Positions 4,344 through 57,762 of a stretch of DNA of 64,000 nt are shown here, one piece after another (positions within the stretch are counted from its first letter, which is position 1; each line of letters opens with the position of its first letter). The position numbers were made by a program, and so were the translations under genes. Source of the stretch: Hypanus sabinus (taxonomy: Eukaryota). The notes under the pieces were generated by a model. It made no database searches. It saw nothing but the letters and a program-made list of their open reading frames with translations, and was not told the origin of the DNA. The stretch spans positions 81,716,001 to 81,780,000 of the forward strand of contig NC_082707.1 of NCBI RefSeq assembly GCF_030144855.1, given 5' to 3'.

Positions 4344-5184
4344 TCCTCACGGGTTTCTTCTGAAAGTTGATCATCAGGACTGGATGCAGTGTTCTGGTCG
4401 TGCTATTATAAGTTTTAGTAGTGTGCTATTTTTATGAGCACACTAGTTCCTGTGTTCTTTGCCAAGTACCCTCTCAACATATCCTGTCACATTCAAAGAT
4501 TTATGTCACAAAACCCCAGGTACTTCTTTTTTCCAAGTTATCCTACCTTCATTCTACCATATTTCTAATTATGAAATTCCATCGCCCACATGATTGCTCA
4601 TTGTTGCAATCAATGCATCTCATCTTACTGTTCACCACACCTTCAAAGTTTGAAAATTTACTCTGTGTTGAAATCCCCTAGTCATAAATTATCTAAAGGA
4701 AACTTCTTGCACTGTCAGATCAGGAGTTTCAGATTAAAATTTATCATAGAAAATATCAATAGCAGGTATATCCACGTCTGGTGCAGATTGACTTGAATGT
4801 GATACCTTTTAATCATTGATGAGTTTTAATGGATGGATAAATTGCAACTTTTCAGTATCAATATGACAATACATTTCTCAGTTCTAATCATCCTTATTAA
4901 GATTTTAAAGAAATAAGATTAAGGCTAAGAGGATTTCAAGAGACACAAGCCACTATAATAGATTCTCAATGTCATTAAGGTTTCTGCCAAAACTAAAGGT
5001 TTCAGGAAATTATGGGAGAAGTAAGTTAACATGCTTCAATATAGTTGTCAGAAACATGAACAGCACTCTGTCAATACACTGGACATAACATTGCACCTTC
5101 ATCTTTACTCCAACTCCTACAAAACTCAGCTCTATCCTCCCAATCATCAGTGGGAATCCATTAATTTCAAAATAAAAGAAACTA

Positions 5185-6490
5185 TAGATCTGGAACAGAA
5201 AGCAGAATACTGGAAGAACTTAGTGGGACGAGCAGTACTTCAGGAGGAAAAAGGTGTAAGTATGTTTTATGCTAAATGTCTGCATGAAGACTGAGAGGGA
5301 AGATGAGAGATTGCCAGTACAGGTACGTAGCAGTACCAGGGGACTGAACAGATGCTGGTAGATAATTGGTGGAATCAGATGGTGTGTTGATGGTGGGCAG
5401 ATGGAACCAAGTGGAGGAAAGGGAAAGGGGAACAATGGGAGAAAGAAAAATTAGGTGGATGGGTAAGTGTGTGTAAGGGAGGTATCAGTACTGTGGATTA
5501 TCTCCAAATGACATATTCAATGCTCAAAGCAATTGGTTGTAAGTTATCCGAGCAGAATAAGGAATGTTATTCCAATTTGCACTTATCCTCTCTGTAGTAA
5601 TGAAGAAGGCTGAAGAGAAACAAGTCAGTGTGGGAGTGGGGAAGAGAGTTAAAATTACATGTATTCAGAAAATCGTGATTGCTATTGCAATTGATTGCAG
5701 ATGATCAGCAAAGTGATTACTGAATCTACACTTGGTTTCACCAATGTTGAGGAAGGCACAGCCTGAAAAACAAATGCAGCTGACCAGGATGGAAAAGGAA
5801 CTGGTGAATCTCTGTGTCAGCTGGAAGGGCTCTTTAGATCCCTGGATGGTGGTGAGGAAGGCAATAAAGGGACAGGTGACAGTATTCCTATGGTTGCAAG
5901 GGAATGCACCTGGAGACAGAGAGAGGTGGATGGAAAGAAATGAGTGGATGAAGGATTTATGAAGAGAGTGGTCACCATGGAAAACAGAAAGAGGATCATG
6001 CTGGAGTAGAGGACCGGGTAGAGGATGATACGTTAAATCCAGAAGCTGGTGGAGTGCTAGGTGAGGAAACGTTATTGCTATTCTCTCTGAGGAGTGATGG
6101 ATGGCAGTAGACACTCAGAAAATGCAGAAATATGTGTGCAAGCTCCATCAACTGTGGCAGAGGGGAAACCACATTTCCTGAAAAAGGAGAACTTTCCAGA
6201 TGCCCCAAATTGCAATGCCTCAATGTGAGAACAGATGCAGCAGAGACAGGAAAACCAAGAGAAAGGGGTGCTATCCTTAGAGGAGGAGATGCAATTGAGG
6301 TAGCTGGGGGAATTAGAGAGTTTATCATAAATGTCAGTGGTTAGTCTGGCTCCTGAGATGGGAATCGAGAAATCCAGAAAAGAAACTGTTAAAAATAATC
6401 TAGGTGAATTTGAGGACAAATCGGTGGTTTGTGGCAAAGGTGATGCAATGGGGATCATGTGTGAGTGTGGGAAACAGCATGAATCATTAA
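5185..6490 (-). mobile_element. Penelope-like element 3' part (RT thumb + GIY-YIG endonuclease + terminal module)
   Basis: ORF 6078-6458 (SFLDFSIPISGARLTTDIYDK...SYL) and 5665-6114 (CPF...FLNIGETKCRFSNHFADHL, a GIY-YIG 'YIGET' motif); decayed terminal module at 5190-5295. Confidence 0.85.
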
Positions 6491-11174: not shown

Positions 11175-12105
11175 GGTGCTTGATTGTGGACTTCAGGAAG
11201 GGTAAGAAGAGGGAACATGAACCAATCCTCATAGAAAGATCAGAAGTGAAGAGAGTGAGCAACTTAAAGTTCTTGATTGTTAAAATCTCTGAGGATCTAA
11301 CCTGGTCCCAAAATATCAAAGCAGCTATAGAGAAGGCAAGAAAGCAGCTATATTTCATTACTCCATTAGGAGTTTGGTTTTGTCACCAAAAACACTCAAA
11401 AACGTCTATAGATAGATGTGCCTTGAAGAGTATTCTCAAAGGCTATATCAGTGCCTGGTATGGTGGAGGGAGGGGGGGGGGATGGGGGGGTTGGTTGCTA
11501 TTGCGCTGTAGTGAAAGAAGCTATAGAAAGTTGTAAACAAGGGAAAATCTGCAGATGCTAGAAATCCAAGCAACACACATTAAAATGCTGGAGGAACTCA
11601 GCAAGACAGGCAGCATCTATGGGAAAAAAGTACAGTCTACATTTCAAGCTGAGACTCTTTGTCAGGAAAGTTGTAAAATCAGTCAGCTCCATCTTGGGTA
11701 GTATCCAAGAAATCTTCAAGCAGTGGTGCCTCAGAAAGGTGACATCCATTATTAAGAACACCCATCACCAAGGGCATGCACTCTTCTCATTGTTTCCATC
11801 AGGAAGGAGGCACAGAAGCATGAAGGCATAGATTCAGCAATTCAGGAGCAGCTTCTTCCCCTCTGCCATAGGATTCCTAAATAGATATTGAACCCATAAA
11901 CTCTATCACACTTTTTAAAATATATACTATTTCTGTTTTGCACTATATTAATTTAACTATTTGATATACATATATAATTAGTGTAATTGATTTACTTATT
12001 GATTTTTTTCTTTTTATTTTATCATGTATTGCATTGAACTGCTGCTGCTGCTAAGTTAACAAATATTATGTCACATGCTGGTGTTAATATCCATGATTCT
12101 GATTC
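11175..12105 (+). mobile_element. Rex1/Babar-like LINE 3' fragment (post-RT region), interrupted at 11538-11665
   Basis: IVDFRK...EVKRVSNLKFL..ISEDLTWS...KARKQLYF and SIIKNTHHQGHALFSLFPSGRR; (GATTCT)n-like tail near 12095. Confidence 0.8.
11538..11665 (-). mobile_element. Stand-alone Penelope terminal module with CpG-decayed hammerhead core
   Basis: Flanked by the 12-bp direct repeat gaaagttgtaaa (11526-11537 and 11666-11677); minus-strand core cctgacaaagagtctcagcttgaaatgtagactg. Confidence 0.85.
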
Positions 12106-14425: not shown

Positions 14426-15029
14426 ATTGAAAGTCCAACTTATTTTCTCCACCAAAGTAAAATCAACTCACATTACATGCTAATTCATTTATGACAGAAA
14501 AGTGAAAGATGACATCAACAGGTCTCTTATTGTCTTCCATTAAACCACTACCATAAATGTGCAGGTCAGTGTAAAAGTTTTGGATCTTAATTTCATTGCA
14601 GCAGACTCAGGTTCTGGTTTTGCTTACTCAACTATTATGAAATGATTGTATAGAACATCTGATTATTTATGTAATGAGCAATTGATCTGCATCATACACT
14701 TACCCATCAGAGAGAGAAGTCGACCTATGATTTTTCTAACCTTTGAATCATCAATGTTAAAATATCAGTTAAAATGCCTCTTTGTCACTCCCTGTCATAA
14801 AACCTCAAGAATACAGGAGCAAGAATAGACCACCTGGTTGCTCAATCCCACTCCACCAGACAATATGAGTATAGCTGATCCCCAGGCCTAGAACCATTAT
14901 ATTATCTCCACATAATTCTCAATTCCAGATCTTTCAAAGTATACATCTATCTCCTCTTTAAATATCTCGGGTGTTCTAGTCTCCACAACCCTCTAAAGTT
15001 CAAAGTGCAAAGTAAATTCATTATCAGAG

Positions 15030-17649
15030 TGCTTTGGAAGGATAGATTAGAGAGCTCCTCCAGGGAGGCTATTTGGGTGGAATTGAGGAATGGGAAGGGT
15101 GTAGTAACACTGATAGGAGTGTATTATAGGCCACCTAATGGGGAGCGTGAGTTGAAAGAGCAAATGTGTAAGGAGATAGCAGATATTTGTAATAAACACA
15201 AGGTGGTGATTGTGGGAGATTTTAATTTTCCACACGTAGACTGGGAAGGTCATTCTGTAAAAGGGCTGGATGGTTTAGAGTTTGTGAAATGTGTGCAGGA
15301 TAGGTTTTTGCAACAATACATAGAAGTACCGAGAAGAGATGGGGCAGTGTTGGATCTCCTGTTAGGGAATGCGATAGGTCAGCTGACAGATGTATGTGTT
15401 GGGGAGCACTTCGGGTCCAGTGATCACAATAGCATTAGCTTCGATATAATTATGGAGAAGGACAGGACAGGACCTAGAGTTGAGATTTTTGAGATGCGAA
15501 GGGATTTAGAGAGAGTGGATTGGGTCAAGTTGTTTTATGGGAAGGATGTAATAGAGAAATGGAGGTCATTTAAGGGTGAAATTATGAGGGTACAGAATCC
15601 TTATGTTCCTGTTAGGTTGAAAGGAAAGGTTAAAGGTTTGAAAGCACCATGGTTTTCAAGGGATGTTAGAAATTTGATTCAGAAAAAGAGAGATGTCTAC
15701 AATAGATATAGGCAGCATGGAGTGAAGGAATTGCTCGAGGAATATAAAGAATGTAAAAGGAATCTTAAGAAAGAGATTAGAAAAGCTAAAAGAAGATACG
15801 AGGTTGGTTTGGCAAATAAGGTGAAAGTAAATCCAAAAGGTTTCTACAGTTATAAAAGCAAGAGGATAGTGAGGGATAAAATTGGCCCCTTAGAGAATCA
15901 GAGTGGTCAGCTATGTGTGGAGCCGAGGGAGATGGGAAAGATTTTGAACGATTTCTTCTCTTCGGTATTCACTAAGGAGAAGGATATTGAATTGTATAAG
16001 GTGTGGGAAACAAGTAAGGAAGTTATGGAACCTATGACAATTAAAGAGGTGGAAGTACTGGCACTTTTAAGAAATTTAAAAGTGGATAAATGTCCGGATC
16101 CTGACAGGATATTCCCCAGGACCTTGAGGGAAGTTTGTGTAGAAATAGCAGGAGCTCTGACGGAGATCTTTAAGATGTCATTAGAAACGGGGATTGTGCC
16201 GGAGGATTGGCGTATTGCTCATGTGGTTCCATTGTTTAAAAAGGGTTCTAGAAGTAAGCCTAGCAATTATAGACCTGTCAGTTTGACATCAGTGGTGGGT
16301 AAATTAATGGAAAGTATTATTAGAGATAGTGTTAATAATTATCTGGATAGACAGGATCTGATTAGGAGTAGCCAGCATGGATTTGTGCATGGAAGGTCAT
16401 GTTTGACAAACCTTATTGAATTTTTTGAAGAAGTTACGAGGAATGTTGACAAGGGTAAGGCAGTGGATGTAGTCTATATGGACTTCAGCAAGGCCTTTGA
16501 CAAAGTTCCACATGGAAGGTTAGTTAAGAAGGTTCAGTCATTAGGTATTAATGCTGGAGTAATAAAATGGATTCAACAGTGGCTAGATGGGAGATGCCAG
16601 AGAGTAGTGGTGGATAATTGTTTATCGGGATGGAGGGGTGCCTCAGGGATCTGTTTTGGGCCCAATGTTGTTTGTAATATACATAAATGATCTGGATGAT
16701 GGGGTGGTAAATTGGATTAGTAAGTATGCCGATGATACTAAGGTAGGAGGTGTTGTGGATAATGAGGTGGGTTTTCAAAGCTTGCAGGGTGATTTATGCC
16801 AGTTAGAAGAATGGGCTGAACGTTGGCAGATGGAGTTTAATGCTGAGAAGTGTGAGGTTCTACATTTTGGCAGGAATAATCCAAATAGAACATACAGGGT
16901 AAATGGTAGGGCATTGAGGAATGCAGAGGAACAGAGAGATCTAGGAATAACAGTGCATAGTACCCTGAAGGTGGAGTCTCATGTAGATAGGGTGGTGAAG
17001 AAGGCTTTTGGAATGCTGGCCTTTATAAATCAAGGCATTGAGTACAGAAGTTGGAATGTAATGTTAAAATTGTACAAGGCATAGGTAAGGCCAAATTTAG
17101 AATATTGTGCAGTTCTGGTCACCGAATTATAGGAAAGATATCAATAAATTAGAGACAGTGCAGAGACGATTTACTAGGATGTTACCTGGGTTTCAGCACT
17201 TAAGTTACAGAGAAAGGTTGAACAAGTTAGGTCTCTATTCATTGGAGCATAGAAGGTTGAGGGGGGATTTGATTGAGGTATTTAAAATTTTGAGAGGGAT
17301 AGATAGAGTTGACGTGAATAGGCTGTTTCCATTGAGAGTAGGGGAGATTCAAATGAGAGGACATGATTTGAGAGTTAGGGGGCAGAAGTTTAAGGGAAAC
17401 ACGAGGTGGTATTTCTTTACTCAGAGAGTGATAGCTGTGTGGAATGAGCTTCCTGTAGAAATAGTAGAGGCCAGTTCAGTTGTGTCATTTAAGGTAAAAT
17501 TGGATAGGTATATGGACAGGAAAGGAGTGGAGGGTTATGGGCTGAGTGCGGGTAGGTGGGACTAGGTGAGATTAAGAGTTCAGCACGGACTAGGAGGGCC
17601 GAGATGGCCTGTTTCCGTGCTGTGATTGTTATATGGTTATATAGTTATA
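15030..17649 (+). mobile_element. Young 5'-truncated CR1 LINE; ORF2 (APE endonuclease + RT) inactivated by few lesions
   Basis: 561-aa ORF (VYYRPP, VGDFN, SSDH, NYRPVSL, SQHGF, DFSKAFDKV) continues as PQGSVLGP..YADD (16638-17084) and a C-terminus (17107-17565); 3' hairpin cagcacgga...tccgtgctg; (TTATATGG)n tail. Confidence 0.97.
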
Positions 17650-29899: not shown

Positions 29900-32800
29900 T
29901 GCAGGAAGCAGGGTTTTAGATTCTTAGACCACTGGGATCTGTTTTGGGGTAAGGATGAATTGTACAAAAGGGATGGGTTGCACCTTAACAGGTGGGGGAC
30001 CAGCATTCTGGCAGGCAGGTTTGCCACTGCTACATGGGTGTGTTTAAACTAAGTAGTGGGAGGGTGAGGAGATGAACTGGAAATATAAGGATGGGGGTAA
30101 AGGGAAAGAGAGAATAAGAAAAGTTAAGAAAGACAACAGAATTAATGGGGCAGAAAGCTCAGGAAGGGATCAGAGAGTATGGCTAAGTGCAATAGGAATC
30201 GATGTGAAAAGTGAGGGGAGTAATGAATTAAAAGTATTACATCTGAATGCATGAAGTATAAGAAATAAAGTAGATGAGTTTGAGGCTCAGTTGGAAATTG
30301 GTAAGTATGATGTTGTAGGAATAACAGAGACATAGCTGCAAGAGGGCCAGGGCTGGGAATTGAATAGTCAAGGGTATACATCCTATTGAAAGGACAGATA
30401 GGTGGGCAGAGGGGGTGGGGTGGCTCTACTGGTGAGGAATGAGATTCAGTCCCTTGTGAGGGGTGACATAGAATCAGGAGATGTAGAGTCAGTATGGATA
30501 GAACTGAGAAATTGTAAGGGCAAAAAGACCCTAATGGGAGTTATCTACAGGCCCCCAAACAGTAGCCTGGATATAGGGTGCAAGTTGAATCAAGAGTTAA
30601 AACTGGCATGTTGCAAAGTAATGCTACGGTTGTTATGGGGGATTTCAAGCATGTAGACTGGGAAAATCAAGTTGGTACTGGACCCCAAGAAAGGGAGTTT
30701 GTGGAGTGCCTCCGAGATGGATTCTTAGAGCAGCTTGTACTGGAGCCTATCAGGGAGAAGGCAATTCTGGATGTAGTGTTGTGTACTTAACCAGATTTGA
30801 TAAGGGAACTCCAGGTAAAGGAGACATCAGGTGGTAGTGACCATAATGTGATGTTTAATCCACAATTTGAGAGGGAGAAGGGAAAATCGCAAGTGTCAGT
30901 ATTACAGTTGAACAAAGGGGACTATGGAGCCATGAGGGAGGAGCTGGCCAAAGTTGACTGGAAGGATACCCTAGCAGGGATGACAGTGGAACAACAATGG
31001 CAGGTATTTCTGGGAATAATACAGAAAGTGCAGGATCAGTTCATTCCAAAGAGGAAGAAAGATTCTAAGGGGAGTAAGGGGCGACCGTGAATGACAGGGG
31101 AAGTCAAGGACAGTATAAAAATAAAAGAGAAGTATAACACAGCAAAGATGAGCGGGAAGCCAGAGGATTAGGAAACTTTTAAAGAGCAACAGAAGATAAC
31201 TAAAAAGGCATTACAGGGAGAAAAGATTAGGTACGAAGGTAAGTTAGCCAAGAATATAAAGGAAGATAGTAAAAGCTTCTTTAGGTATGTAAAGAGGAAA
31301 AAATTAGTTAAGACCAAAGTTGGGCCCTTGAAGACAGAAACGGGTGAATTTATTACAGGGGACAAGGAAATGGCAGACAAGTTGAACAGGTACTCTGGAT
31401 TTGACTTCACTAGGGAAGACACAAACAAACTCCCAGATGTAATAGTGGCCAGAGGACCTAGGGTAATGGAGGAACTGAAGAAAATTCACATTAGGCAGAA
31501 AATGGTGTTGGGTAGACTGATGAGACTGAGGGCTAATAAATCCCCAGGGCCTGATGGTCTGCACCCCAGGGTACTTTAGAAATTGGCTCTAGAAATCATG
31601 GAAGCATTGGTAATCATTTTCCGATGTTCTATAGATTGAGGATCAGTTCCTGTGGATTAGGAAGTAACTAATGTTATCCCACTCTTTTAGGAAGGAGGGA
31701 GAGAGAGAACAGGGAAATATAGGCCAGTTAGCCTGACATTAGTGATGGTAAAGATGCTGGAGTCAATTATAAAAGATGAAATAGTGGCACATTTGGATAG
31801 CAGTAACAGGATCAGTCCAATTCAGCATGGATTTACGAAGGGGAAATCATGCTTGACTAATCTTCTGGAATTTTTTGAGGATGTAACTATGAAAATGGAC
31901 AAGGAAGAGCAAGTGTATATAGTGTACCTGTACTTTCAGAAAGTTTTTGATAAGGTCCCGCATAGGAGATTAGTGGGCAAAATTAGAGCATATGGTATTG
32001 GTGGTAGGGTACTGGCATGGATAGAAAATTGGTTGGCAGACAGGAAACAAAGAGTAGGGATTAACAGTTCCCTTTCAGAATGGCAAGCAGAGACCAGTGG
32101 GGTACCACAAGGCTTGGTGCTTGGACCACAGCTATTTACAATATACATTAATGATTTGGATGAAGGGATTAAAAGTAACATTAGCAAATTTTCAGATGAC
32201 ACAAAGCTGGATGGCAGTGTGATATGTGAGGTTATGAGAATGCAGGGTGACTTGGACAGGTTGGGTGAGTGGACAGATGCATGGCAGATGCAGTTTAATG
32301 TGGATAAATGTGAGGTTATTCACTTTGGTGGCAAGAACAGGAAGGCAGATTACTATCTGAATGGTGTCAAGTTAGGAAAATGAGAAGTACAACGAGATCT
32401 AGGTGTCCTTGTTCATCAGTCACTGAAAGTAGGCATGCAGGTACAGCAGGCAGTGAAGAAAGCTAATGGCATGTTGGCCTTCATAACAAGGGCAGTTGAG
32501 TATAGGAGCAAGGAGGTCTTTCTGCAGTTGTACAGGGCCCTGGTAAGACCATACCTGGAGTATTGTGTGCAGTTTTGGTCTCTAAATTTGAGGAAAGACA
32601 TTCTTGCTATTGAGGGAGTGCAACGTAGGTTCATAAGGTTAATTCCCAGGACGACGGGACTGTCATATGTTGAAAGATTGGAGTGACTGGGCTTGTATAC
32701 ACTGGAATTTAGAAAGATGGGAGGGGATCTGATTGAAACATATAAGATTATTAAGGGATTGGACATGCTAGAGGCAGGAAACATGTTCCCTATGTTGGGG

Positions 32801-33114
32801 GAGTCCAGAACCAGAGGTCACAGTTTAAGAATAAGGGGTAGACCATTTAGAACGGAGTTGAGGAAAAACTTTTTCACCCAGAGAGTTGTGGATCTGTGGA
32901 ATGCTCTGCCTCAAAAGGCAGTGGAAGCCAATTCTTTGGATGCTTTCAAGAAAGAGTTAGATAGAGCTCTTAAAGTTAGTGGATTCAAGGGATAGGGGGA
33001 GAAGGCAGGAACGATGTACTGATTGTGGATGATCAGCCATGATCACACTGAATGGCGGTGCTGGCTCAAAGGGCTGAATGGCCTACTCCTACTCCTATTG
33101 TCTATTGTCTATTG
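29900..33114 (+). mobile_element. CR1/HER1-type LINE: ORF1 C-terminus (SGNH esterase-like) + whole ORF2 region with many stops
   Basis: QGFRFLDHWDLFWGKDELYKRDGLHLNRWG; LKVLHLNA; IYRPPN; GPDGLHPRVL; GVPQGLVLGP; FSDD; (CTATTGT)n tail; possible TSD tcttag (29894-29899, 33115-33120). Confidence 0.95.
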
Positions 33115-33304: not shown

Positions 33305-33875
33305 AGTGAAGGGTGTGGAGAAGGAGCTGTGGTTCCTGGGTGTCAGTACGTTCGGGGATCTCTCTTGGATCCTGCACATAGATGCAACCATGAAGAAGGC
33401 ACACCAGTGTCTCTACTTCTTTAGTTTAACAAGATTTGGCATATCATCAGAGACTGACAAAATTCTAGAAAAAATGGTAGAAAATATTCTAAGGAAAAGA
33501 ATACGGTCGAGGTTTCAGCCTGAAACTTCGACTGTATTCTTTTCCACAGATGCTGCCTGGCCTGAACAGTTCTGCCAGAACATACAGAACATATCTACAG
33601 TACATATGGTTCTGCCCATTTAATTAATCTGTAGATATGTACTGTAGAGTGTGTTGCTTGAATTTCCAGCATCTTCAGATTTTCTCTTGTTGTTGATTAG
33701 AAAACATTCTGACTGGTTGCATTATGTCCTGGTATGGAAAGTCCAATGCACAGGAATGCGAGAAGTGTCAGAGAGTGGTGTACTGAGCTCCATCAAGGGC
33801 ACAGCTCCCTGTTCTATCGAGGACATGTGCAAGAGGCGATGCCTGAGGGAGATGACATCTATCTTTAAAGACTGC
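33305..33875 (+). mobile_element. Rex1/Babar-like fragment interrupted at 33491-33697
   Basis: FLGVSTFGDLSW..HIDATMKKAHQCLYF; resumes at ttctgactggttgcatt. Confidence 0.7.
33491..33697. mobile_element. Fold-back Penelope terminal-module insertion
   Basis: 13-bp TSD tagaaaa(t/c)attct (33478-33490, 33698-33710); internal palindrome with 26-bp arms at 33493-33545. Confidence 0.85.
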
Positions 33876-33919: not shown

Positions 33920-34270
33920 ACCTCCTGTGCTCCTTGATAAACGTTGCATTTGCAATGGCCACAAGATTAACCTTGAAGCCACAAAAGCCAGTGGCTGTTG
34001 GAACTGCCAGGTGAAGGAAGACTTCAAAACAAAATTATAGAAAAAGTATTTTAACCAAGACAAAAGTCTCACTCTAAGCAAGAACTGGAATTTGAAGGTG
34101 GGACAGTGGAAATCTGAATTGTTGAGGACTGAGCAAGGAGGGACAGACAATGGGGTATAAATACCACTGGACTAGACATGCCTGGGAACCATCCCTGATG
34201 AAGATGGCAGAGTTTGTCATCGAAACGTCAGTTAAAATCGACATCTGTACCCAGCTGAAAGCCTTCGTCA
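33920..34270 (+). mobile_element. Second Penelope-like family: GIY-YIG C-terminus + pseudo-LTR
   Basis: CICNGHKINLEATK..GCWNCQVKE..K.FNQDKSLTLSKNWN; TATA box ggggtataaata at ~34152; hammerhead core downstream. Confidence 0.75.
34187..34233 (+). ncRNA. Minimal type I hammerhead ribozyme motif (core intact, stem I weakened)
   Basis: CTGATGA (34195-34201), A, 8-bp stem II GATGGCAG/TTGTCATC, GAAAC, GTC cleavage triplet (34227-34229). Confidence 0.7.
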
Positions 34271-34675: not shown

Positions 34676-36005
34676 TGTAGTGTTTTGCTGGTGCAAAAAG
34701 TTAACTTTGATGACATTTATATGCTGAATGTGAATGCCTGTGGCAATAAACTAAACTTGAATTCTAATCCTCCTCAAGAAGATCACAGCTGACAAATATC
34801 CCTGACACTAAAGAATACTCATCTTGTCCCCATCTAAAGGTGCTAAGGGTAATTATTGAAGGTTATTAAACAGTTTCCATATTTTTCAAAGACTTGTCAA
34901 GCGTTCATTAAATAGACTTGTTGAACTCTCTGAGGGAGCTATTGATGAGATTTTAATGATTCTATCCAGAGTTTCAGACAAGTTTCAATTTCCATTGAAG
35001 TGACTATACAACTATTCATGCTTTATCTTCATTAATAATCTGTGAAGTGTTTAAAGTTGAGCAGTGTCACAGTTCATTCTCTGCAAGGGATATTGGATCA
35101 GAGTTGAAGCTTTCTGCAAGTTTGGGCCCTTGTGAATTTTTTTCTGAACCATCTTGTGCTGCAAACTATATCTTGTTAAGCTCTTGCATTGAAAATATTC
35201 CTCCGTTCTTCTGGTATCAAATCCAAGGTATAAAATCAAGCTATATATGTATAATGCACTGATGCCTGGGAATTCATGCCAATTCAGAAAGGCAGAACAT
35301 GCTATATAATTACATAAGTGCATTGTTTTTAGCTTCTGAAATTTATTCCATTGTAAAGAACAAAACACAATATTTAGACCAATATCCTGACTAAGAACAA
35401 ATTTTGAGGCAAAAGGTGGAAATTGAGACTATAGATGAGGGATGTTTAAAATATAGGAGAAATTTTTGCAAGTACTCAGCAGGTTAGACAGCATACAAGA
35501 GAAATAAGCAGGTAACAAAGTGATGGGTAGACTGCTTTACCAAACCCTTGCACTCCGTCCACCAAGAATGTGAGGTTTCTATGTAGCCACCCATTTCAAT
35601 TCCACTTCCCATTTTCATTCTAACATGTCAGTCCTTGCCTCCACTAGTACAGCTATGAGGCCACATTCGGGTCAAAAACCAAACTGCATACTCCGACTCT
35701 GTTTTAACCCCCTAATTCAGTCCCTTCCTACCTACATCCATAACACTTCACACATTCCTGACCTTTTCAATGATTTCAAGGTTCCTGGCCCCGATCGTCT
35801 CATTTTCTTGGTGGATGTCCAGTCCCTGTACACCTCCATCCCCCATCAAGAGGGTCTTAAAGCTCTCAGCTTCTTTCTAGAGAACAGATTCGACCTTTTC
35901 CTCTTCACCACCACTCTCCTCTGTCTGCCGGAATTGCTCTCACTCTCAGTAATTTGTCCTTTGGCTCCTCCCAGTTTCTCCAAACCAAAGGTGTAGTCAC
36001 AGGTA

Positions 36006-36100
36006 ACACACACAAAATGCTGGTGGAATGCAGCAGGCCAGGCAGCATCTATAGGAAGGAGCATTGTCGATGTTCCATGCCGCGATGTTTCCTCGTGTTT
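36006..36100. mobile_element. 95-bp fold-back Penelope terminal-module insertion
   Basis: Perfect 15-bp TSD gtgtagtcacaggta (35991-36005, 36101-36115); minus-strand tail on the left, plus-strand terminus tttcctcgtgttt on the right. Confidence 0.9.
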
Positions 36101-36515
36101 GTGTAGTCACAGGTACTCGCTTGGGTCCCAGCTATGCTATTGCTCCCTAACTCTTCCTATGCTACATTGAGGACTGCATGCATGTTACTTTTCGCACCCA
36201 AGCTGAGCTCATAGACTTCATCGACTTTGCTTCCAACTTCCACTCTGCCCTCAAATTTACCTGGTCCATTTCCAACAGCTCCTTCCCTTTCCTCGATGTC
36301 TCTGTGTCCATCTCTGGAGACAGTCTATCTACTGTTATCTTTTGTAAACCCAAGGGTTCTCACAGCTACCTGTACTATACCTCTTCCCACCCTGTCACTT
36401 GTAAAATGCCAGATTCTTCTCTCATCCAGTTCCTCCGTCTCTACTGCATCAACTCTCAGGATGAGACTTTTCATTCCAGAACTAATAAGGTGTCCTCCTT
36501 CTTCAAAGAGAGGGT

Positions 36516-36815
36516 CATAAGAACATGAGAAATAGGAGCAGGAGTCGGCCAGCCAACCCATTGAACCTGCCCCGCAATTCAATAAGACCATGGCTGATCT
36601 GTCTGTAAACTCAGCTCCATCTACCTGCCTTTTCCCCATAACCCTTAATTCCCTTACTATGTAAAAACCTATCTAACTGTTTCTTAAATATATTTAGTGA
36701 AGAAGCCTCAACTGCTTCCCTGGGCAGAGAATTCTACAGACTCGCCACTCTCTGGGAAAAACAGTTTCTCCTCATCCCCGTCCTAAATCTTCTCCCCTGA
36801 ATCTTGAGGCAATGT
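36516..36815 (-). mobile_element. CR1 3' fragment
   Basis: cataagaacatgagaaataggagcaggagtcggcc...catggctgatct tail type. Confidence 0.8.
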
Positions 36816-37257
36816 CCCTTTCTTCCTTTCCTCCACCATCAATGCTGCCCTCATCCATATTTCTTCCATTGTAAGCAAATCTGCCCTCACCCCATCCTCC
36901 CACTGCCCCACCAGAGGTAGGGTTCCTCTTGTCCTCACCTACCACCCCATTATCCTCCACATCAAGAACATAATTTACCATAGCCTCTACCGTCTCCAAA
37001 GGGATCCTACCACAAAGCACATTTTCCCTTCCCGCCCCCCCCACTTCCCACTTTCTGCAGGGATTGCTCCTTATGTGACCTCCATGTCCCCTCATCCCTC
37101 ACCCTTGACCCTCCTGATACCTATCCTTACAAACAGAACAAGTGTCACACCTACCCCTACAACTCCTCCCTCACTACCATTCAGGACCCCAAACAGTCCT
37201 TCCAGGTGACGTGACACTTCAGGTCTATGGGGATCATCTGCTGTATCCGGTGCTCCT

Positions 37258-38235
37258 AGACCATAAGATATAGGAGCAAAATTAGTCCATACAGCCCATT
37301 GAATCTGCTCCACCATTCCATCTGGGCTAATCCTGGATCCCACTCAACCCCATACACCTGCCTTCTCACCATATCCTTTGATGCCCCAACTGATCAGGAA
37401 ATGATCAACATCCACCTTAAAATACCCACGTACATGGCCTCCACCACAGTCTGCAGAAGAGCATTCCACAGATCCACCACTCTCTGGCTAAAATAATTGC
37501 TCCTTACCTCTGTTTGAAAAGGTTGCCCCTCAATTTTGAGGCTGTGCTCTTGAGTTCTGGATACCTGCACCACAGGAAACATCCTCTCCACATCCACCTT
37601 ATCGTCCTTTCAACATCCAGTAGGTTTCAATGAGGTCCCTACACATTCTTCTCAATTCCAGTGATTACAAGCCCAAAGTTGCCAAACATTCCTCATGTGT
37701 TAACCCATTCATTCCCGGAATCATCCTTGTGAACCCCCTCTGGACTCTCTCCAATGACAACACATCCTTTCTGAGATATGGAGCTCAAAACTGTTAACAT
37801 TACCTTTAGTGTGGCCTGACTAGTGTCTTATAAAGGTTCAGCATTATCTCCTTGTTTTTATATTCTATTTCCCTTGAAATAAATGCCAATATGGGAGTCT
37901 TGCACGAGGACTCCCATGTCTCTCTGCAACTCTGATGTTTGAACCTTCTCCCCATTTAGATAATAGTTCACACTATTGTTAATTTTATCTGAATGCATTG
38001 TCATACATTTCCCAACACTGTATTCCATCTGCCACTTTTTTTGCCCATTCTTCCAATTTGTCTAAGTCCTGCTGCAATCACATTGCTTCCTCAGCACTAC
38101 CTACCCCTCCACCTATCTTCGTATCATCTGCAAACTTTGCATCAAAGCCATCAATTCCATTATCTAAATTATTGACAAACATTGCGAAAAGCAGCAGTCC
38201 CAGTACTGACCCCTGAGGAACACCCCTAGTCACTA
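37258..38235 (-). mobile_element. CR1 3' fragment (~1 kb)
   Basis: ORF 37394-37597 (YFSQRVVDLWNAL); minus-strand GVPQGSVLG at ~38200-38230. Confidence 0.85.
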
Positions 38236-38447
38236 GTCTCCTGATGCAGTTTCCTGTATATCGGTGGGACGCGACAGAGATTGGGAGACAGCTTCACTGA
38301 GAATTTACTGTCTGCCAGAAGAAGCAAAATCTGCTGGTGGCCACCCATTTTCATTCTACTTCCCATTCCTATTCTGACATGGCAGTCCATGGCCTCCTCT
38401 ACTACTACCACGATGAACCCACACTTGGGTTGGAGGAGCAACAGCTT

Positions 38448-39393
38448 CAAGTCAAGTCAAATCAAGTCAAGTCAATTTTTATTGTCATTTTGACCATAAT
38501 TGCTAGTACAGTACCCAGTAAAAACGAGACATTTTTCAGGACCATAGTGCAACATGAAACCATACAAAAACTACACTGGACTACGTAAAAACAACACAGA
38601 AAAAAACTACACTAGAATACAGGCCTACCCAGGACTGCATAAAATGCACAAGACAGTGCAGGCATTATAATAAATAATAAACAGGACAGTAGGCACAGTA
38701 GAGGGCAGTAAGTTGGTGTCAGTCCAGACTCTGGGTATTGAGGAGTCTGATGGCTTGGGGGAAGAAACTGTTACATAGTCTGGTCATGAGAAACCGAATG
38801 CTTCAGTGCCTTTTCCCAGAAGGTAGGAGGGAGAAGAGGTTGTATGAGGGGTGCGTGTGGTCCTTCATAATGCTGTTCACTTTGTGGATGCAGAGTGTAG
38901 TGTAAGTGTCTGTAATAGCAGGAAGAGAGACCCCGATGATCTTCTTAGCTGACCTCACTATCCGCTGCAAGGTCTTGCGATCCGAGATGGTGCAATTTCT
39001 GAACCAGGCAGTGATGCAGCTGCTCAGGATGCTCTCAATACAACCTCTGGAGAATGTGATGAGAATGGGTGGGTGGAAGATGGACATTCCTCAGCCTTCG
39101 GAGAAAGTAGAGATGTCACTGGGCTTTCTTTGATATGGAGCTGGTGTTGAGGGTCCAGGTGAGATTTTCCGCCAGGTGAACACCAAGAAATTTGATGCCC
39201 TTAACGATCTCTACCGAGGAGCCATCGATGTTCAGCAGGGAGTGGTCGCTCTGTGCCCTCCTGAAGTCAACAACCATCTCTTTTGTTTTGTTCACATTCA
39301 GAGACAGGTTGTTGGCTCTGCACCAGTCCATTAGCTGGTGCACCTCCTCTCTGTAAGCTGACTCATTGTCCTTGCTGATGAGACCTACAACAG
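38448..39393 (-). mobile_element. Rex1/Babar-like LINE 3' fragment
   Basis: WCRANNLSLNVNKTKEMVVDFRR...KFLGVHLAENLTW; IESILSSCITAW; (TTGAC)n tail; TSD aacagctt (38440-38447, 39394-39401). Confidence 0.88.
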
Positions 39394-40989
39394 AACAGCT
39401 TATGTTCTGTCTGGGTAGACTCGTGCCTGATGGCATGAAAATTGATTTCTCAAACTTCCAATAATTGGCCCCCATCATCGTTCCCCATTCCTGTTTCTCT
39501 CTCTCTCTCACCTTATCTCCTTACCTGCCCATCACCTCCCTCTGGTGCTCCTCCCCCTTCCCTTTCTTCCATGGTCTCCTATCAGATTCCCCCTCCTCCA
39601 GCTCTTTATCTCTTTCACCAATCAACTTCCCAGTTCTCTTTCTTCACCCCTTCTCCTGTTTTCGTCCATCACCTATCACCTTGTACTTCTTCCTTTCCTC
39701 TCCCAACCCTCTTACACTGACTCCTCCCCTTCCTTTTCTAGTCATGAATAGGATCTCAGCCCAGAACATCAACTATTTACTCTTTTCCATAGATGCTGCC
39801 TGACCTGCTGAGTTCCTCCAGCATTTTGTGTGTGTTGCTTTGGATCTCCAGCGTCTACAGAATTTCTCATGTTTGTCATTAACAGGATGGGTCTTGTTCC
39901 ACTAAAGTCCTTGCAGGTGAGGCTTATGAAATGAGTGATACCTCTTGACAAATTATTCTAAATTGAATGAACCAGTTATTTTTATCTTCATTCACAGGAC
40001 TTGTTCCTGATGTGATTAAGATATAAATTCAGTGCTCAATATTTAAATCAAAATCTTAAACCAACACCAGAAGTATAATTTAAGACTGTGTACCTTTCTT
40101 AATTGATCAGATACTTGATATTCTCAATGTTTTTAGTAAGTCATTTCCCAATAGGCAATGCAGCTTTTAAAGATATAATTGTGAACAAAATGAGCTTTGA
40201 AGCACTCTTCTCTTCATCACACAATGGTAATTATTGTTCTGTGATATAAAAAAATATGAATAAATGTGCACTGCAGTAAAAGTAACCACAAAGGGTTAGT
40301 CTAGCTGTGTAGAGGAGACTCCATTTCTGATTTTTTTTCTCAATTACATTATAATGTATAGGCCCAGAAGTACTTGGACTTTAATTCAGTTGAAATTCAA
40401 TACAAAAGCAGAATACAACCAGTTGTCTCATTTTGATTAAAACCTTCCTCCTGGAAAGATCGGAGTTTTGTCAGCTAATTTCCTCAAACCCAAGTGATAA
40501 CCCTTTTAATGTTTGGCCTACTGCTTGAATTTCCATTTTCTCAAGTGAACTGAAGCAGCTGTTACAGTATATATTGATGAACAATAAATATTAATATCTT
40601 TAAAGCAGAAGGAAAAGACATTCAATGATTTAATTTAACTTAACAAATTGAACAATAAGTGTACATTCAGAACATTTTAATGACTTAATGGATAGTTCTT
40701 TAATAATGGCTAGCATTTTTGCTGAGTATAATGAGTGTGTTGCTGTCCACCTGGCCAGCTTACCTTTTGTTATTTTTGGAGACAGTGCTTAACTACTTTT
40801 ATATATACTCTGTAAAGATATTTTTTTTAATTATATTTCAGATCTACTTCAGGTCTTGATAATACTGCTTTCTATTTTGATCAATTTATAAACTGTCCAT
40901 TTATATTAAGTGGTGACTGACACAGACTACTTTAAGTAATTACACCATAACTAGTTGATTAAAGTTCATATTCATGACAGTTGAGTCAA

Positions 40990-41770
40990 GAGAAAAACAC
41001 CAAAACTGCTGGTGGATCCCAGCAGGTCAGGCAGCATCTATCATTTTGGACCAAGACCCTTCATCTGGAGGAAACCAGAATAAGAAGGAGGTGTGAGGGG
41101 AAGAAGGACAAGCTGGAAGGGGGAAGGTAGGTGGGTGGGAGAGTGGGAATCTGAGAAGCAAAAAGTGGAAAAGGTAAAGGGCTGCAGAAGAAGGAATCTG
41201 ATGGGAGAGGAGAGTGGACTGTGGGAGAAAGAGAAGGAGGACTGGCACCAGAAAGAGGTGATAGCTGGGAAGGAGAAGAGAAAATGTAAGAGGGGAGCCA
41301 GAATTTAGAATGGAAAAGGAGAGAAGGAGTTGGGGGAAAGTACCAGAAGTTGGAGAAATTGATGTTCACATCATCAAACTACCCTGACAGAACATGAGAT
41401 GTTGCTCCTCCAACCTGAAAGTTGCCTCCTTGTGGCAGTAGAGGAGGCCATGGACTAACATGTCAGAATATGAAAGGGGAGTGAAATTAATATTTTGTCC
41501 TCCAGGAAATCCTCTCTGATATGGATGAAGCCAGGGTCCCCCAATCTATATTGGGTCTTATTGATGTAGAGGAGGTGGCACCAGGGAAACTCAGTACATT
41601 AGATGACCCCAACAGACTTGAAATGCTGCCTCACCTGAAGAACTGTTTGAATCATGAATGGCGATGAGAGAGGAGGTGAATAGCAGGTGTAGCTTGTTCC
41701 ACTTGCAGGAGTGAGAGCCAGGAAGGAGATCAGTGGGGAGGAATAACTGACAAGGGAAGCAGAGAGGGTG
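40990..41770 (-). mobile_element. Penelope-like 3' fragment with decayed hammerhead core
   Basis: Homologous to 38236-39875; minus-strand ccagatgaagggtcttggtccaaaat. Confidence 0.75.
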
Positions 41771-42273
41771 TGAGCCTGATGACTTTTCTCACTAATATTT
41801 GAGTAAAGGGCATTACCCTAGTGAACAATATATCACTTGATTTATATATTTGATGTGACAGTAATGTTTTGTATATTTTTCTTTGGAAGCAGTCATTCTG
41901 AAAGAGAAAAATAAGTAAATAAACTTCTGAAAATGGCAGTCAAATTATTTGTAAGTTTGGCTTTATTCTATTCGATTCAAATGCTGACCTTCAATCTTTC
42001 TCTTTTAATGTCAATAGGTCTTCTTATTAGCTTGTCACAACAACTAATTGCAAGGTACTTACAATCTGTCACATTATTGCAGGAGATGGCTGTTTATTTT
42101 TGTGCAGTCTGAATAATAGACACAGCAGGACTTGAAGAACTCATGCATCAGCAGATACTGTGAACCATCTGCTCAGAATATTCAATATCTTCAGAACAGA
42201 TAACTTAGAACCTATTCATAGCCTTGGGTCATCAGCTGTAACACAACTATAAACTGCTTCTTAAGTTCTGCTT

Positions 42274-53355: not shown

Positions 53356-53733
53356 GCAATGAACAAAATGCTGAAGGAAACTAGATGATCAGGAAATGCC
53401 TGTGGAGTGAAATGGACAGTCAGTGTTTCAGGACGAGACTGTTCAAATGGACCAGAGGAAGGAACTAAACTCAAGACCCTTGTGGCTAAAGGGATCGGGG
53501 GTATGGAGAGAAAGTAGGTACACCGTTCTGAGTTAGATGATCAGCCATGACCATACTGAATGGCGGTGCAGGTTTGAAGGGCCGAATGGCCTACTCCTGC
53601 ACCTATTTTCTATGTTTCTATGTTTCAGCACACCAAATGTCCATTTCCCTCCACAGATGTTGCTTATCCCACTGAGTTCCTCTAGCATTTGGTACGTGGT
53701 TCCACATTCCAGCATCTACAGTCTCCTGGGTCC
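53356..53733. mobile_element. Fold-back Penelope terminal-module pair with a CR1 tail (~53475-53625, +) inserted at its centre
   Basis: Minus-strand module 53360-53455 and plus-strand module 53630-53725; flanks tca(c/g)attccaaat at 53343-53355 and 53734-53746. Confidence 0.7.
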
Positions 53734-56122: not shown

Positions 56123-56530
56123 GTTTAATTAGCAGATAGGTATGAGGTGTGGAGTGCAAGGTAGATGTGCATTAGGGGATTAGGTGTGCTGAGGGGCTGT
56201 GGAGAGGATTGGCTGGCATGGATATAGTGGTGGTGGGGAATGGTGTGTAGGTTTATAGGTGGAGATTGTAGGTTTGTGCATTACTTTGGCTGCAGGGTTA
56301 AATCATATACTGAATGTATTGATTTAGTTACAACCACAATTAGGAAGAGATCCCACCCATTGGATTAAAATCAAAATAGCCAGCACACATGCTCAATGGT
56401 TTGCAAACACTTAAAAAAAAACAACTTTTGGAATGAAACCTACAGTACTTAAATTATCTGTATCCTCATTGCCAGAGTGAACTAAAGCCAATGAGTAATT
56501 AATTAAAGAAACTCATTGCTTTGTAATTAT

Positions 56531-56660
56531 GCCAAGCAGCATCTATGGAAAAGAGTACATTCAATGCTCTGGGCTGAGACCCTTCATCCTGATGAGTTCC
56601 TCCAGCATTTTGTGTGTGTGATGCTTGGATTTCTAGCATTTTCAGATTTTCTCTTGGCTG
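56531..56660. mobile_element. 130-bp fold-back Penelope terminal-module insertion
   Basis: 9-bp TSD tgtaattat (56522-56530, 56661-56669); strand switch at cccttcatc|ctgatgag. Confidence 0.85.
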
Positions 56661-57284
56661 TGTAATTATAGCTGCTTTCTCTGTTCTGGGTCATGCTTAG
56701 AAATACACTTGGAAGTATACAAAATATTCTTAAAATGGAAAGGTACTAAGAAAACAACGTTCTATCCGTTGTGGGAAAGTGCCAGTGGAGTTTTTAAGTG
56801 TCAGTCTGTGGTATGTTATGACCATGTTGATTTGTTACGTTACATTTGTTTCATATGTGAAGTCCTATAAAGTTATGTTTTAGTGAAGGATAAGACTGCT
56901 GCAAGTTTAGCTCTAGGTTATGTCAAAATGATCAACAAAAGAACTATCCTCTTGCATTTGGCCTCTCCCTCATATCAAGTCTGCCTTTTGGCAATCAACA
57001 TGTTGCAACATTGTGTGACAACATGGCTAATACACTATTACACAGACACTGATTGATAATATTGAGGATATTGATGATAATTGAACTTATTGTTGACATT
57101 GTTCCTAAGATAATGAACATTTGACTGTTTCTGTTCCTAGCTCGGCCAGTAAGTGTTTGTACAACTGAACCTGATCCTTATCACCTAGGTAACACATTGC
57201 ATTTTTCTTAATGGGATTACACAGGCGTACCAAACAGTTATTCCTTCTAGCAGGAGCAGAGCACAATTATCACCATAAAATAGA

Positions 57285-57762
57285 GTCATGTCAGTCCTCT
57301 ACTGCCACGACAAGGCCACACCTTGTATTCCGTATGGGTACCCTCCAACCTCAATTCATGAACATCAATTTCTTGAACTTTCAGTAATTTACCCCACCCC
57401 CACCATTCTACATTCCAATTTCCATCTCTAATCTGCCAATCTCCTTCTTCTGGTTCTCTTCCCCTTTCCCTTTATTCCATGGTCTTCTTCCCTCTCCCAT
57501 CAGATTTCACCTTCTTCAGCCCTTTATCTTTTTCACCAACTTTCCAGCTCTTTACTTCATCCCTCCCCCTCTCCCTTTCCTGGTTTCACCTAACACCTAC
57601 CACCCTGTACTTCTTCCTCCCCTCCTCCCATATTCTTACTTTGACTTATCAACTTTTTGTCCAGTCCTGATGAAGGGTCTTGGCCCGAAACGTTGACTAT
57701 TTATTTTTTGCCATAGACACTGCCTGGCCTGCTGAGTTCCTCCAGGATTTTGTGTGTGTTGC
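57285..57762 (+). mobile_element. Penelope-like 3' fragment
   Basis: Homologous to 39400-39875 (atgaacatcaatttc, pyrimidine-rich UTR, terminal module). Confidence 0.8.
57663..57698 (+). ncRNA. Minimal type I hammerhead ribozyme motif (intact core)
   Basis: Stem I AGTC/GACT; core CTGATGA (57667-57673) + A; stem II GGGT-CTTG-GCCC; GAAA; palindromic stem III AACGTT; predicted cleavage after GTT (57694). Confidence 0.8.

What the first reader, a model, noticed from the sequence alone, without database searches (positions are those of the whole stretch)
57663..57698. Intact minimal hammerhead ribozyme at a Penelope-like element terminus
Seen: agtc-CTGATGA-A-gggt(cttg)gccc-GAAA-cgtt-gact, with all conserved hammerhead core nucleotides, stem I AGUC/GACU and stem II. 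Stem III is reduced to the palindrome AACGUU. Established: Penelope-like elements carry minimal type I hammerheads in their terminal repeats, and these are thought to cleave as dimers through the palindromic stem III. Inference: this copy may still self-cleave after GUU if transcribed on +, unlike the CpG-eroded siblings at ~11630-11665, ~39740 and ~41045.
Basis: partly seen in the sequence, partly recalled or inferred. Interest (0 to 1): 0.7.

Follow-up and report, generated by a model that had tools for sequence, protein, structure and literature searches.

The report
Relic hammerhead motif in Penelope tail
The 36-base hammerhead-ribozyme motif is really there, but it is the already-described minimal hammerhead that all Penelope-like retrotransposons carry near their ends. 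Here it sits in an old, truncated, dead copy in a cartilaginous-fish genome, so it is an ordinary repeat feature.

Summary
Observation confirmed. Window 57663-57698 (+) reads AGUC-CUGAUGA-A-GGGU(CUUG)GCCC-GAAA-CGUU-GACU. It is the only match to a min-hammerhead descriptor in the window, with 0 matches in 300 dinucleotide shuffles.

It lies about 280 nt downstream of a frameshifted remnant of a GIY-YIG endonuclease C-terminus. Homologues of that remnant in rays and sharks carry RT plus GIY-YIG, so this is the 3' end of a 5'-truncated Penelope-like element (PLE).

The motif shows every published hallmark of PLE minimal hammerheads:
- 4-bp helix I
- an unpaired nucleotide between A9 and G10.1
- a G10.1-C11.1 pair
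- a palindromic ACGU in place of helix III

The copy is old (about 12% lineage-specific divergence, CpG o/e 0.22). Its motif differs from sibling copies only at two CpG/TpG sites, in loop II and at position 17.

Activity is unproven and doubtful:
- there is no partner motif in cis
- the cleavage triplet is GUU
- a copy-specific alternative hairpin is predicted to sequester the 3' half
- published PLE hammerheads cleave poorly, as dimers or with protein help

Rfam models do not detect the motif. The same scan has already noted this family many times elsewhere in this genome. Known kind, low interest.

The parts
57285..57384 (+). Frameshifted remnant of the C-terminal end of the PLE ORF (GIY-YIG endonuclease domain). 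A stop codon follows at 57385-57387.
   Evidence: The last 21 codons (57322-57384) align to P0019 residues 431-451 with E=5e-7. The preceding 15 codons, in another frame (57285-57329), align to P0002 with E=3e-4. Alignment A2 places both on the GIY-YIG C-terminus of RT+GIY-YIG homologues. No support was found further upstream.
57385..57662 (+). CT-rich 3' untranslated region of the PLE copy.
   Evidence: Homologous to 39395-39838 (69-73% identity) and to 41165-41398 on the minus strand.
57663..57666 (+). Helix I, 5' strand (AGUC, positions 2.4-2.1).
   Evidence: Pairs with GACU at 57695-57698.
57667..57674 (+). Core box CUGAUGA (C3-A9) plus an unpaired A between A9 and G10.1.
   Evidence: Seen in the sequence. 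The extra nucleotide is a stated hallmark of PLE min-hammerheads (PMC4209133).
57675..57686 (+). Helix II hairpin GGGU-CUUG-GCCC (G10.1-C11.1 closing pair, 3 G-C pairs plus a U-G, 4-nt loop).
   Evidence: Loop position 57681-82 is TG here and CG/CA in sibling copies.
57687..57694 (+). Core GAA (G12-A14), then A15.1-C15.2-G16.2-U16.1 (palindrome ACGU, no loop III), then U17. The predicted cleavage site lies between 57694 and 57695.
   Evidence: Position 57694 is T of a TG that is CG in some siblings.
57695..57698 (+). Helix I, 3' strand (GACU, positions 1.1-1.4).
57699..57762 (+). Terminal segment of the element downstream of the hammerhead (…CCATAGACACTGCCTGGCCTGCTGAGTTCCTCCAGGATTTTGTGTGTGTTGC). 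Homology to siblings ends at 57762.
   Evidence: This is the most conserved part of the family, with at least 10 copies in the window. This copy and the one at 36002-36106 end here. Others run about 45 nt further.
57649..57662 (+). Copy-specific upstream segment predicted to pair with 57675-57696 and so compete with the hammerhead fold.
   Evidence: The MFE hairpin has dG -13.9, against -9.4 kcal/mol for the hammerhead-compatible fold. The UCAAC:GUUGA pairs have probability 0.89-0.998. The complementary bases are substitutions specific to this copy relative to 39716-39739.
39740..39774 (+). Sibling hammerhead region with a broken core, in a second 5'-truncated PLE 3' end (39378-39880).
11634..11669 (-). 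Sibling hammerhead region with a broken core, in a tail-only copy.
41042..41071 (-). Sibling hammerhead region with a broken core and a deleted 3' part, in a third PLE 3' end (40985-41790) that keeps GIY-YIG remnants.

Best explanation
Window ~57285-57762 (+) is an old, 5'-truncated, non-autonomous remnant of an endonuclease-positive Penelope-like retrotransposon in an elasmobranch genome. Its 3' untranslated/terminal-repeat region carries the minimal type I hammerhead motif typical of PLEs. In this copy the motif (57663-57698) has kept all core nucleotides and both helices, so it is 'intact' at motif level.

Mechanistically (inferred from the literature, not shown here), such a motif has no helix III of its own. 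It can reach an active fold only by pairing its ACGU with a second copy (a double hammerhead) or with help from the PLE protein. Cleavage would then fall after U17, between 57694 and 57695.

For this particular copy the intactness is best read as chance survival in a dead insertion, and in vivo self-cleavage is unlikely.
For: The motif is present and non-random: 1 hit against 0 in 300 shuffles.

PLE context:
- ORF remnants of this copy and its siblings align to elasmobranch proteins (Hypanus sabinus, Rhincodon typus).
- Homologues of those proteins have RVT_1 plus a C-terminal GIY-YIG domain.
- RT and EN remnants of the same family occur elsewhere in the window.

Every textual hallmark of PLE min-hammerheads is met (PMC4209133): 4-bp helix I, an unpaired nucleotide between 9 and 10.1, G10.1-C11.1, and a palindromic 15.2-16.2 pair.

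Dead-copy status:
- The copy is 5'-truncated and the ORF remnant is frameshifted.
- Lineage-specific divergence is about 12% (46/389) and CpG o/e is 0.22.
- No second motif-intact PLE-family hammerhead occurs in the window.

Doubtful activity:
- An alternative hairpin is predicted to dominate.
- The double-hammerhead pairing scores -14.1 kcal/mol, against -27.1 for the dimer MFE and -17.0 for two free monomers.
- In the literature, a PLE min-hammerhead monomer is inactive and dimers cleave weakly (PMC4209133).
- The Anolis Poseidon hammerhead cleaves only with protein and is dispensable for insertion in vitro. No RNA-seq ends were found at its cleavage site (PMC11167929).
Against: - No experiment or read data were available, so activity cannot be excluded.
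- Nearest-neighbour folding ignores the tertiary contacts of the hammerhead core, co-transcriptional folding and proteins.
- The motif has fewer changes (2 in 36) than the copy average. Two of the copy's four surviving CpGs lie in the core. This is weakly suggestive of constraint but not significant (about P 0.1-0.2 by rough estimate).
- Rfam hammerhead models do not recognise the motif.
- The covariation test on the nine decayed window copies is not significant.
Confidence: 0.8

Rival explanations
1. The copy is still a working self-cleaving ribozyme. When transcribed on +, it dimerises through ACGU with another PLE transcript and cuts after U17.
For: All core positions, helix I (4 bp) and helix II (4 bp) are intact. 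U at position 17 is an allowed H (established hammerhead rule, from my own knowledge). The genome holds very many related copies that could supply partners in trans (lead; at least 10 tails in this window).
Against: There is no partner in cis. A competing hairpin is predicted at more than 0.99 probability. GUU is a poorer triplet than GUC (own knowledge). A14-U17 pairing in the AACGUU duplex would distort the core. PLE min-hammerheads are weak even as designed dimers (PMC4209133) or need the element's protein (PMC11167929). Transcription of this locus is unknown.
Confidence: 0.1
2. For the family as a whole, the hammerhead-like module is kept mainly as a structured recognition or template-switch element for the PLE reverse transcriptase, not as a ribozyme. 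Cleavage would be incidental.
For: In the Anolis Poseidon element, hammerhead catalytic mutants do not affect insertion, and cleavage needs the protein (PMC11167929). In this window an inverted tail duplication is joined exactly inside helix II/loop II (33488-33518 / 33520-33550). Another head-to-head junction abuts the hammerhead 5' core (56529-56668). Both hint at template switching at this hairpin.
Against: Strict conservation of catalytic nucleotides across PLE clades, and canonical active hammerheads in fungal and plant PLEs, argue for cleavage (PMC4209133). Two junctions are anecdotal. Nothing here tests protein binding.
Confidence: 0.08
3. The motif belongs to a non-autonomous hammerhead retroposon (an animal 'retrozyme' or SINE-like element) rather than to a PLE copy itself.
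For: Short tail-only copies that start near the hammerhead exist in the window (11567-11674, 36002-36106). Animal retrozymes derive from PLE terminal repeats (bioRxiv 10.64898/2026.07.22.740005).
Against: This copy is contiguous with the PLE ORF end and 3' UTR. There is no tandem repetition of the unit around 57663.
Confidence: 0.02
4. Chance resemblance to a hammerhead in unrelated sequence.
For: Rfam hammerhead covariance models give no hit even at E<=10 on 63 nt.
Against: There were 0 descriptor hits in 300 shuffles. The motif is homologous to a repeat family whose other copies show the same layout in decayed form. The PLE context is established.
Confidence: 0.005

Closest known systems
Minimal hammerheads of metazoan Penelope-like elements (Cervera & de la Pena 2014, PMC4209133; Lunse, Weinberg & Breaker 2017, as summarised in PMC6765202)
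   Same: Same location: the terminal repeat/3' region of an RT+GIY-YIG PLE. The motif is type I. Helix I is 4 bp. There is an unpaired nucleotide between A9 and G10.1, a G10.1-C11.1 pair, no loop III, and a palindromic 15.2-16.2 pair giving ACGU. Many dispersed truncated copies are present.
   Different: Helix II is only 4 bp with a tetraloop, whereas 6-8 bp is described as usual for the Schistosoma/Drosophila families. The host is an elasmobranch, a group not named in the 2014 survey. Position 17 is U in this copy.
Poseidon element of Anolis carolinensis (PAc) hammerhead (PMC11167929)
   Same: A vertebrate PLE with a hammerhead in the terminal repeat. There is a short downstream 'tail' with alternative insertion ends.
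   Different: In PAc the ORF start overlaps the hammerhead. Here the motif is seen only downstream of the ORF, because the copy is 5'-truncated. PAc activity (protein-assisted) was measured; nothing was measured here.
Double-hammerhead self-cleavage of newt satellite 2 and ASBVd RNAs (Forster et al. 1988, cited in PMC6155905 and PMC6765202)
   Same: An unstable or absent helix III means activity is expected only when two motifs pair through a palindromic helix III region.
   Different: Those RNAs are tandem multimers, so the partner is supplied in cis. This locus is a solitary copy.
Animal non-LTR retrozymes (PMC7229834; bioRxiv 10.64898/2026.07.22.740005)
   Same: Type I hammerheads derived from PLE terminal repeats. 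They are present in Chondrichthyes according to the preprint.
   Different: Retrozymes are tandem arrays that give circular RNAs. No tandem array exists here, and the unit is joined to a PLE ORF remnant.
CChMVd (+) hammerhead with an extra A between A9 and G10.1 (De la Pena & Flores 2001, cited in PMC4209133)
   Same: An extra unpaired nucleotide at the same core position, known to be tolerated.
   Different: That is a viroid type III hammerhead with full helices and tertiary contacts.

Membership tests
PLE minimal type I hammerhead (Cervera & de la Pena 2014) | Conserved core boxes CUGANGA and GAAA, with H (not G) at position 17 | tested here: met
   CUGAUGA at 57667-73, GAAA at 57687-90, U at 57694
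PLE minimal type I hammerhead (Cervera & de la Pena 2014) | [quoted passage not shown] | tested here: met
   A at 57674. The feature is listed in PMC4209133
PLE minimal type I hammerhead (Cervera & de la Pena 2014) | G10.1-C11.1 pair closing helix II | tested here: met
   G57675-C57686. Helix II is GGGU/GCCC
PLE minimal type I hammerhead (Cervera & de la Pena 2014) | No or minimal helix III, with palindromic 15.2-16.2 (dimer interface) | tested here: met
   A-C-G-U at 57690-93 with no loop
PLE minimal type I hammerhead (Cervera & de la Pena 2014) | Short helix I (4-5 bp) open at the ends (type I) | tested here: met
   AGUC/GACU, 4 bp. The next pair would be C/A
PLE minimal type I hammerhead (Cervera & de la Pena 2014) | Covariation or compensatory changes in helices I and II across family copies | tested here: inconclusive
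   Nine decayed window copies were tested. 66.7% of cells are paired, against 63.6% in shuffles. The covariation score was reached by 62 of 500 shuffles. No further copies could be fetched
PLE minimal type I hammerhead (Cervera & de la Pena 2014) | Mg2+-dependent self-cleavage after position 17 | not testable with these tools
   Needs in vitro transcription or RNA end mapping.
Rfam hammerhead families (Hammerhead_1, _3, _II, HH9, HH10) | Score at or above the gathering threshold of the covariance model | tested here: not met
   No hammerhead hit at gathering, nor at E<=10 on 401 nt or 63 nt. This is expected (inference), because these models include a helix III hairpin that min-hammerheads lack
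Endonuclease-positive Penelope-like element | C-terminal GIY-YIG endonuclease encoded just upstream of the terminal region | tested here: met
   The remnant at 57285-57384 aligns to the C-terminal end of homologues. Their GIY-YIG domain passes Pfam PF01541 in P0116, P0043, P0072 and P0057. The window pieces alone give no Pfam hit
Endonuclease-positive Penelope-like element | Reverse transcriptase in the same ORF | tested here: inconclusive
   Absent from this copy because it is 5'-truncated. Present in homologues (RVT_1) and in another window copy of the same family at 35547-37256
Endonuclease-positive Penelope-like element | Pseudo-LTR: the same terminal region repeated upstream of the ORF (partial tandem) | tested here: not met
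   No upstream repeat of the 57385-57762 region is adjacent to this copy. This is as expected for a 5'-truncated insertion
Endonuclease-positive Penelope-like element | [quoted passage not shown] 2021, PMC8557442) | tested here: met
   Seen in homologue P0004 (CKWNKCYTC … VVYCVRCSWCGLLYIGET) and, decayed, in the sibling at 41594-41788. Not retained in the 57285-57762 copy itself

The most novel reading that the evidence does not exclude
Despite its age and truncation, this solitary copy is a functional trans-dimerising ribozyme. It pairs through ACGU with transcripts of other PLE copies and cleaves the host transcript it sits in, which would make it a repeat-borne RNA-processing switch.
Probability: 0.04. 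Interest if true: 0.45.

Novelty: already known. Interest (0 to 1): 0.12.

Why it matters
It matters little as a discovery. Minimal hammerheads in the terminal regions of Penelope-like elements have been described since 2014, and the same scan has flagged this family many times in this genome. It is a clean, well-anchored example from an elasmobranch: ORF end, 3' UTR, hammerhead, then tail. It could serve as one test substrate for the open question of whether PLE min-hammerheads cleave at all in vivo. It also shows how a motif can stay 'intact' by chance in a decayed copy.

Tried and rejected
- Rfam gave no hammerhead hit at gathering threshold or at E<=10. A weak SNORD111 match (E 0.7-0.95) is chance.
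No expression or RNA-end evidence exists.
- A metagenome pattern scan for family copies returned two chance matches in prokaryote-like coding DNA (L001, L002).
- Pfam on the short window ORF pieces gave nothing. The PDB sequence search with P0004 gave nothing.
- RNAalifold on nine copies predicted no consensus structure. Pair counting was not significant.
- The Lunse et al. 2017 paper is not held; it is cited only through a review.
- I considered whether the hammerhead-like motif at 34190-34230 is the upstream terminal repeat of the PLE copy at 35547-38516. No N-terminal PLE homology lies between them, so this was rejected or left open.

Full report
OBSERVATION. The window contains no N.

In standard hammerhead numbering the parts are:
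- helix I 5' strand: 57663-66
- C3-A9: 57667-73
- an extra unpaired A: 57674
- helix II, GGGU/GCCC with loop CUUG: 57675-86
- G12-A14: 57687-89
- A15.1-C15.2-G16.2-U16.1: 57690-93
- U17: 57694
- helix I 3' strand: 57695-98

Cleavage would fall between 57694 and 57695.

I wrote a descriptor modelled on the published min-hammerhead search: 4-bp helix I, CUGANGA, a 0-1 nt bulge, helix II of at least 3 bp closed by G-C, GAAA, a Watson-Crick 15.2/16.2 pair, U16.1 and H17. It matches only this site on either strand and matched nothing in 300 dinucleotide-preserving shuffles. The looser pattern CTGATGA-N(8-24)-GAAAC occurs three times, against 0.25 expected. So the motif is real and not a chance string.

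WHAT IT SITS IN. The motif is part of an interspersed repeat. Window 57318-57762 aligns with 39395-39838 at about 70% identity. Shorter pieces align with 41165-41398 (-), 11570-11667 (-), 36005-36052 (-), 33518-33578 (+), 56588-56619 (+) and others.

Upstream of three of these copies, translation shows the end of an ORF of the form …LEEQHL(I/M)F.LG.LQP.G(M/I)N(I/V).F.NF*. A 59-residue piece from the sibling at 41369-41545 (-) was searched against 1.84 billion representatives. It found 12 proteins; the five looked up come from the stingray Hypanus sabinus and the whale shark Rhincodon typus.

One of these, P0004, has 334 relatives. [quoted passage not shown] I confirmed RVT_1 followed by PF01541 in P0116, P0043 and P0072, and PF01541 in P0057.

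In a joint alignment the window pieces fall on the C-terminal end of that GIY-YIG domain. For the copy in question:
- the last 21 codons (57322-57384) match P0019 with pairwise E=5e-7
- the preceding 15 codons, in another frame, match P0002 with E=3e-4
- nothing is detectable further upstream

[quoted passage not shown] Craig et al. 2021 describe these for endonuclease-positive PLEs (PMC8557442).

RT and EN remnants of the same family occur at 35547-38516 (+) and 5516-6389 (-).

The locus is therefore a 5'-truncated PLE copy laid out as:
- ORF end: about 57285-57384
- CT-rich 3' UTR: 57385-57662
- hammerhead: 57663-57698
- terminal segment: 57699-57762

The hammerhead is on the same strand as the ORF. 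The host is an elasmobranch, judged from the nearest proteins. This is an inference and the species was not determined.

COMPARISON WITH THE KNOWN FAMILY. Cervera & de la Pena 2014 (PMC4209133) reported minimal hammerheads in the terminal repeats of all PLEs examined. They listed the features that emerge beyond the search descriptor:
- a short helix I (4-5 bp) with ill-defined loop 1
- a conserved G10.1-C11.1 pair
- palindromic 15.2-16.2 positions, allowing a dimeric helix III

All four are met here. The only difference is a shorter helix II (4 bp against 6-8 bp).

Rfam's hammerhead covariance models do not report the motif at gathering threshold or at E<=10, even when only 63 nt are searched. 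I attribute this to the absence of a helix III hairpin. This is an inference, in line with the need for a special descriptor in the 2014 work.

STATE OF THIS COPY. In a three-way alignment with the two other ORF-bearing copies, 46 of 389 aligned positions are changes specific to this copy, about 12%. Its CpG observed/expected ratio is 0.22, like the window average of 0.19. So it is an old, methylation-decayed insertion.

Across the copies, four dinucleotides of the hammerhead are CG in some and TG/CA in others: in loop II, at C11.1-G12, at C15.2-G16.2, and at 17-1.1. This copy reads TG at two of them (loop II and position 17), both tolerated positions. It keeps CG at the two that involve core or pairing nucleotides.

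Two changes in 36 nt, against about five expected, and two of four CpGs retained, are not statistically remarkable by my rough estimate. The site was also flagged precisely because it is intact. I read the intactness as survival by chance.

The siblings at 39740-39774, 11634-11669 (-) and 41042-41071 (-) have substitutions or deletions within CUGAUGA, at G12, or downstream.

WOULD IT CLEAVE? Nothing here measures that. The points against are as follows.

1. A min-hammerhead has no intramolecular helix III, and the published S. mansoni example showed no monomer activity and only weak dimer or trimer activity (PMC4209133). The Anolis Poseidon hammerhead cleaved only in the presence of the element's protein, was dispensable for insertion in vitro, and left no RNA-seq ends at its site (PMC11167929).

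2. This copy is solitary. No second motif-intact hammerhead of this PLE repeat family lies in the window to form a cis dimer. The only other core-intact motif, at 34190-34230, lacks helix I.

3. In its local context the RNA is predicted to fold into an alternative hairpin, in which 57649-57662 pairs with 57675-57696.
- This fold has dG -13.9 kcal/mol, against -9.4 for the hammerhead-compatible fold.
- The helix I and II pairs have probability about 0.001.
- The complementary bases are substitutions specific to this copy.

4. The double-hammerhead pairing of two 36-mers evaluates to -14.1 kcal/mol. The dimer MFE is -27.1 and two free monomers total -17.0.

5. U17 gives a GUU triplet, which is active but poorer than GUC in classical kinetics (my own knowledge). 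It also makes the palindrome AACGUU, whose outer A14-U17 pair would engage two catalytic-core positions.

The caveat is that nearest-neighbour energies ignore core tertiary structure, kinetics and proteins.

Covariation in helices I and II across the nine window copies is not significant: 66.7% of cells are paired against 63.6% in shuffles, and 62 of 500 shuffles reach the covariation score. RNAalifold predicts no consensus structure. With such decayed copies this is uninformative rather than negative.

WHAT COULD NOT BE DONE.
- The single metagenome scan gave only two chance matches.

Expression, RNA ends and genome-wide or cross-species covariation therefore remain untested.

EARLIER NOTES OF THIS SCAN. 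A word search shows 341 notes on hammerhead/Penelope features in this genome. Two follow-ups concluded 'truncated Penelope tails carrying the known minimal hammerhead' and 'fold-back Penelope end with hammerhead at its centre'. My own tests on this window agree. I also see a fold-back tail at 33488-33550 whose centre lies in helix II.

VERDICT. The suggestion of residual activity is untested and unlikely. This is a known kind of element in a common repeat, so interest is low.

Noticed in passing
window 34190-34230 (+): A second hammerhead-like motif with an intact core: catcc-CTGATGA-a-GATGGC(agagttt)GTCATC-GAAA-CGTC-agtt. It has a 6-bp helix II, the bulged A, ACGU and a GUC triplet, but no recognisable helix I. 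It is a single copy in the window. No PLE N-terminal homology lies between it and the PLE copy at 35547.
   Followed up: partly
window 33488-33550 (+): Fold-back of the PLE tail. There are two inverted arms of 31 nt, 87% complementary and 1 nt apart. The centre falls in the helix II/loop II region of the hammerhead. The right arm continues into the normal tail, which is then interrupted at about 33580-33650.
   Followed up: partly
window 56529-56668: Head-to-head junction. An inverted partial copy (hammerhead plus the first part of the tail, 56529-56597 on -) abuts a direct copy of the tail end (56588-56668 on +).
   Followed up: no
window 35547-38516 (+): The longest PLE remnant in the window, with RT then GIY-YIG. 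It is interrupted by a reverse-oriented tail-only copy at 36002-36106 and by another insert at about 37256-38245. An extra GIY-YIG-end fragment at 35574-35699 lies directly before the RT part.
   Followed up: partly
window 5516-6389 (-) and 5204-5276 (-): Another PLE ORF remnant (thumb plus GIY-YIG) with a strongly decayed hammerhead/tail region downstream. It is likely a different subfamily.
   Followed up: no
window 57762, 36002 versus 39880, 11535, 33690, 56668: Copies of the tail end at one of two places. Some end right after GTGTGTGTT(G/A)C and others end about 45 nt further (…TTGGATTTCCAGCATCTGCAGATTTTCTCTTG). This resembles the optional 30-40 bp 'tail' and internal RT initiation described for PLEs (PMC11167929, PMC8557442).
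   Followed up: partly
window 4353-4377 (-): ccagtcCTGATGAtcaactttcagaaGAAAC shares the 13-nt 5' edge with the motif at 57661-57673 but has no helix II. It is probably a decayed hammerhead of a related element.
   Followed up: no
window 15005-17565 (+) and 30400-33110 (+): Two non-LTR LINE remnants. One has an apurinic-type endonuclease plus RT ORF of 561 aa. The other is CR1/L2-like and ends in the repeat …GGCCGAATGGCCTACTCC…, which recurs at 53536-53618 and elsewhere.
   Followed up: no
window 2095-2200 (+): A perfect tandem duplication of a 53-nt unit.
   Followed up: no
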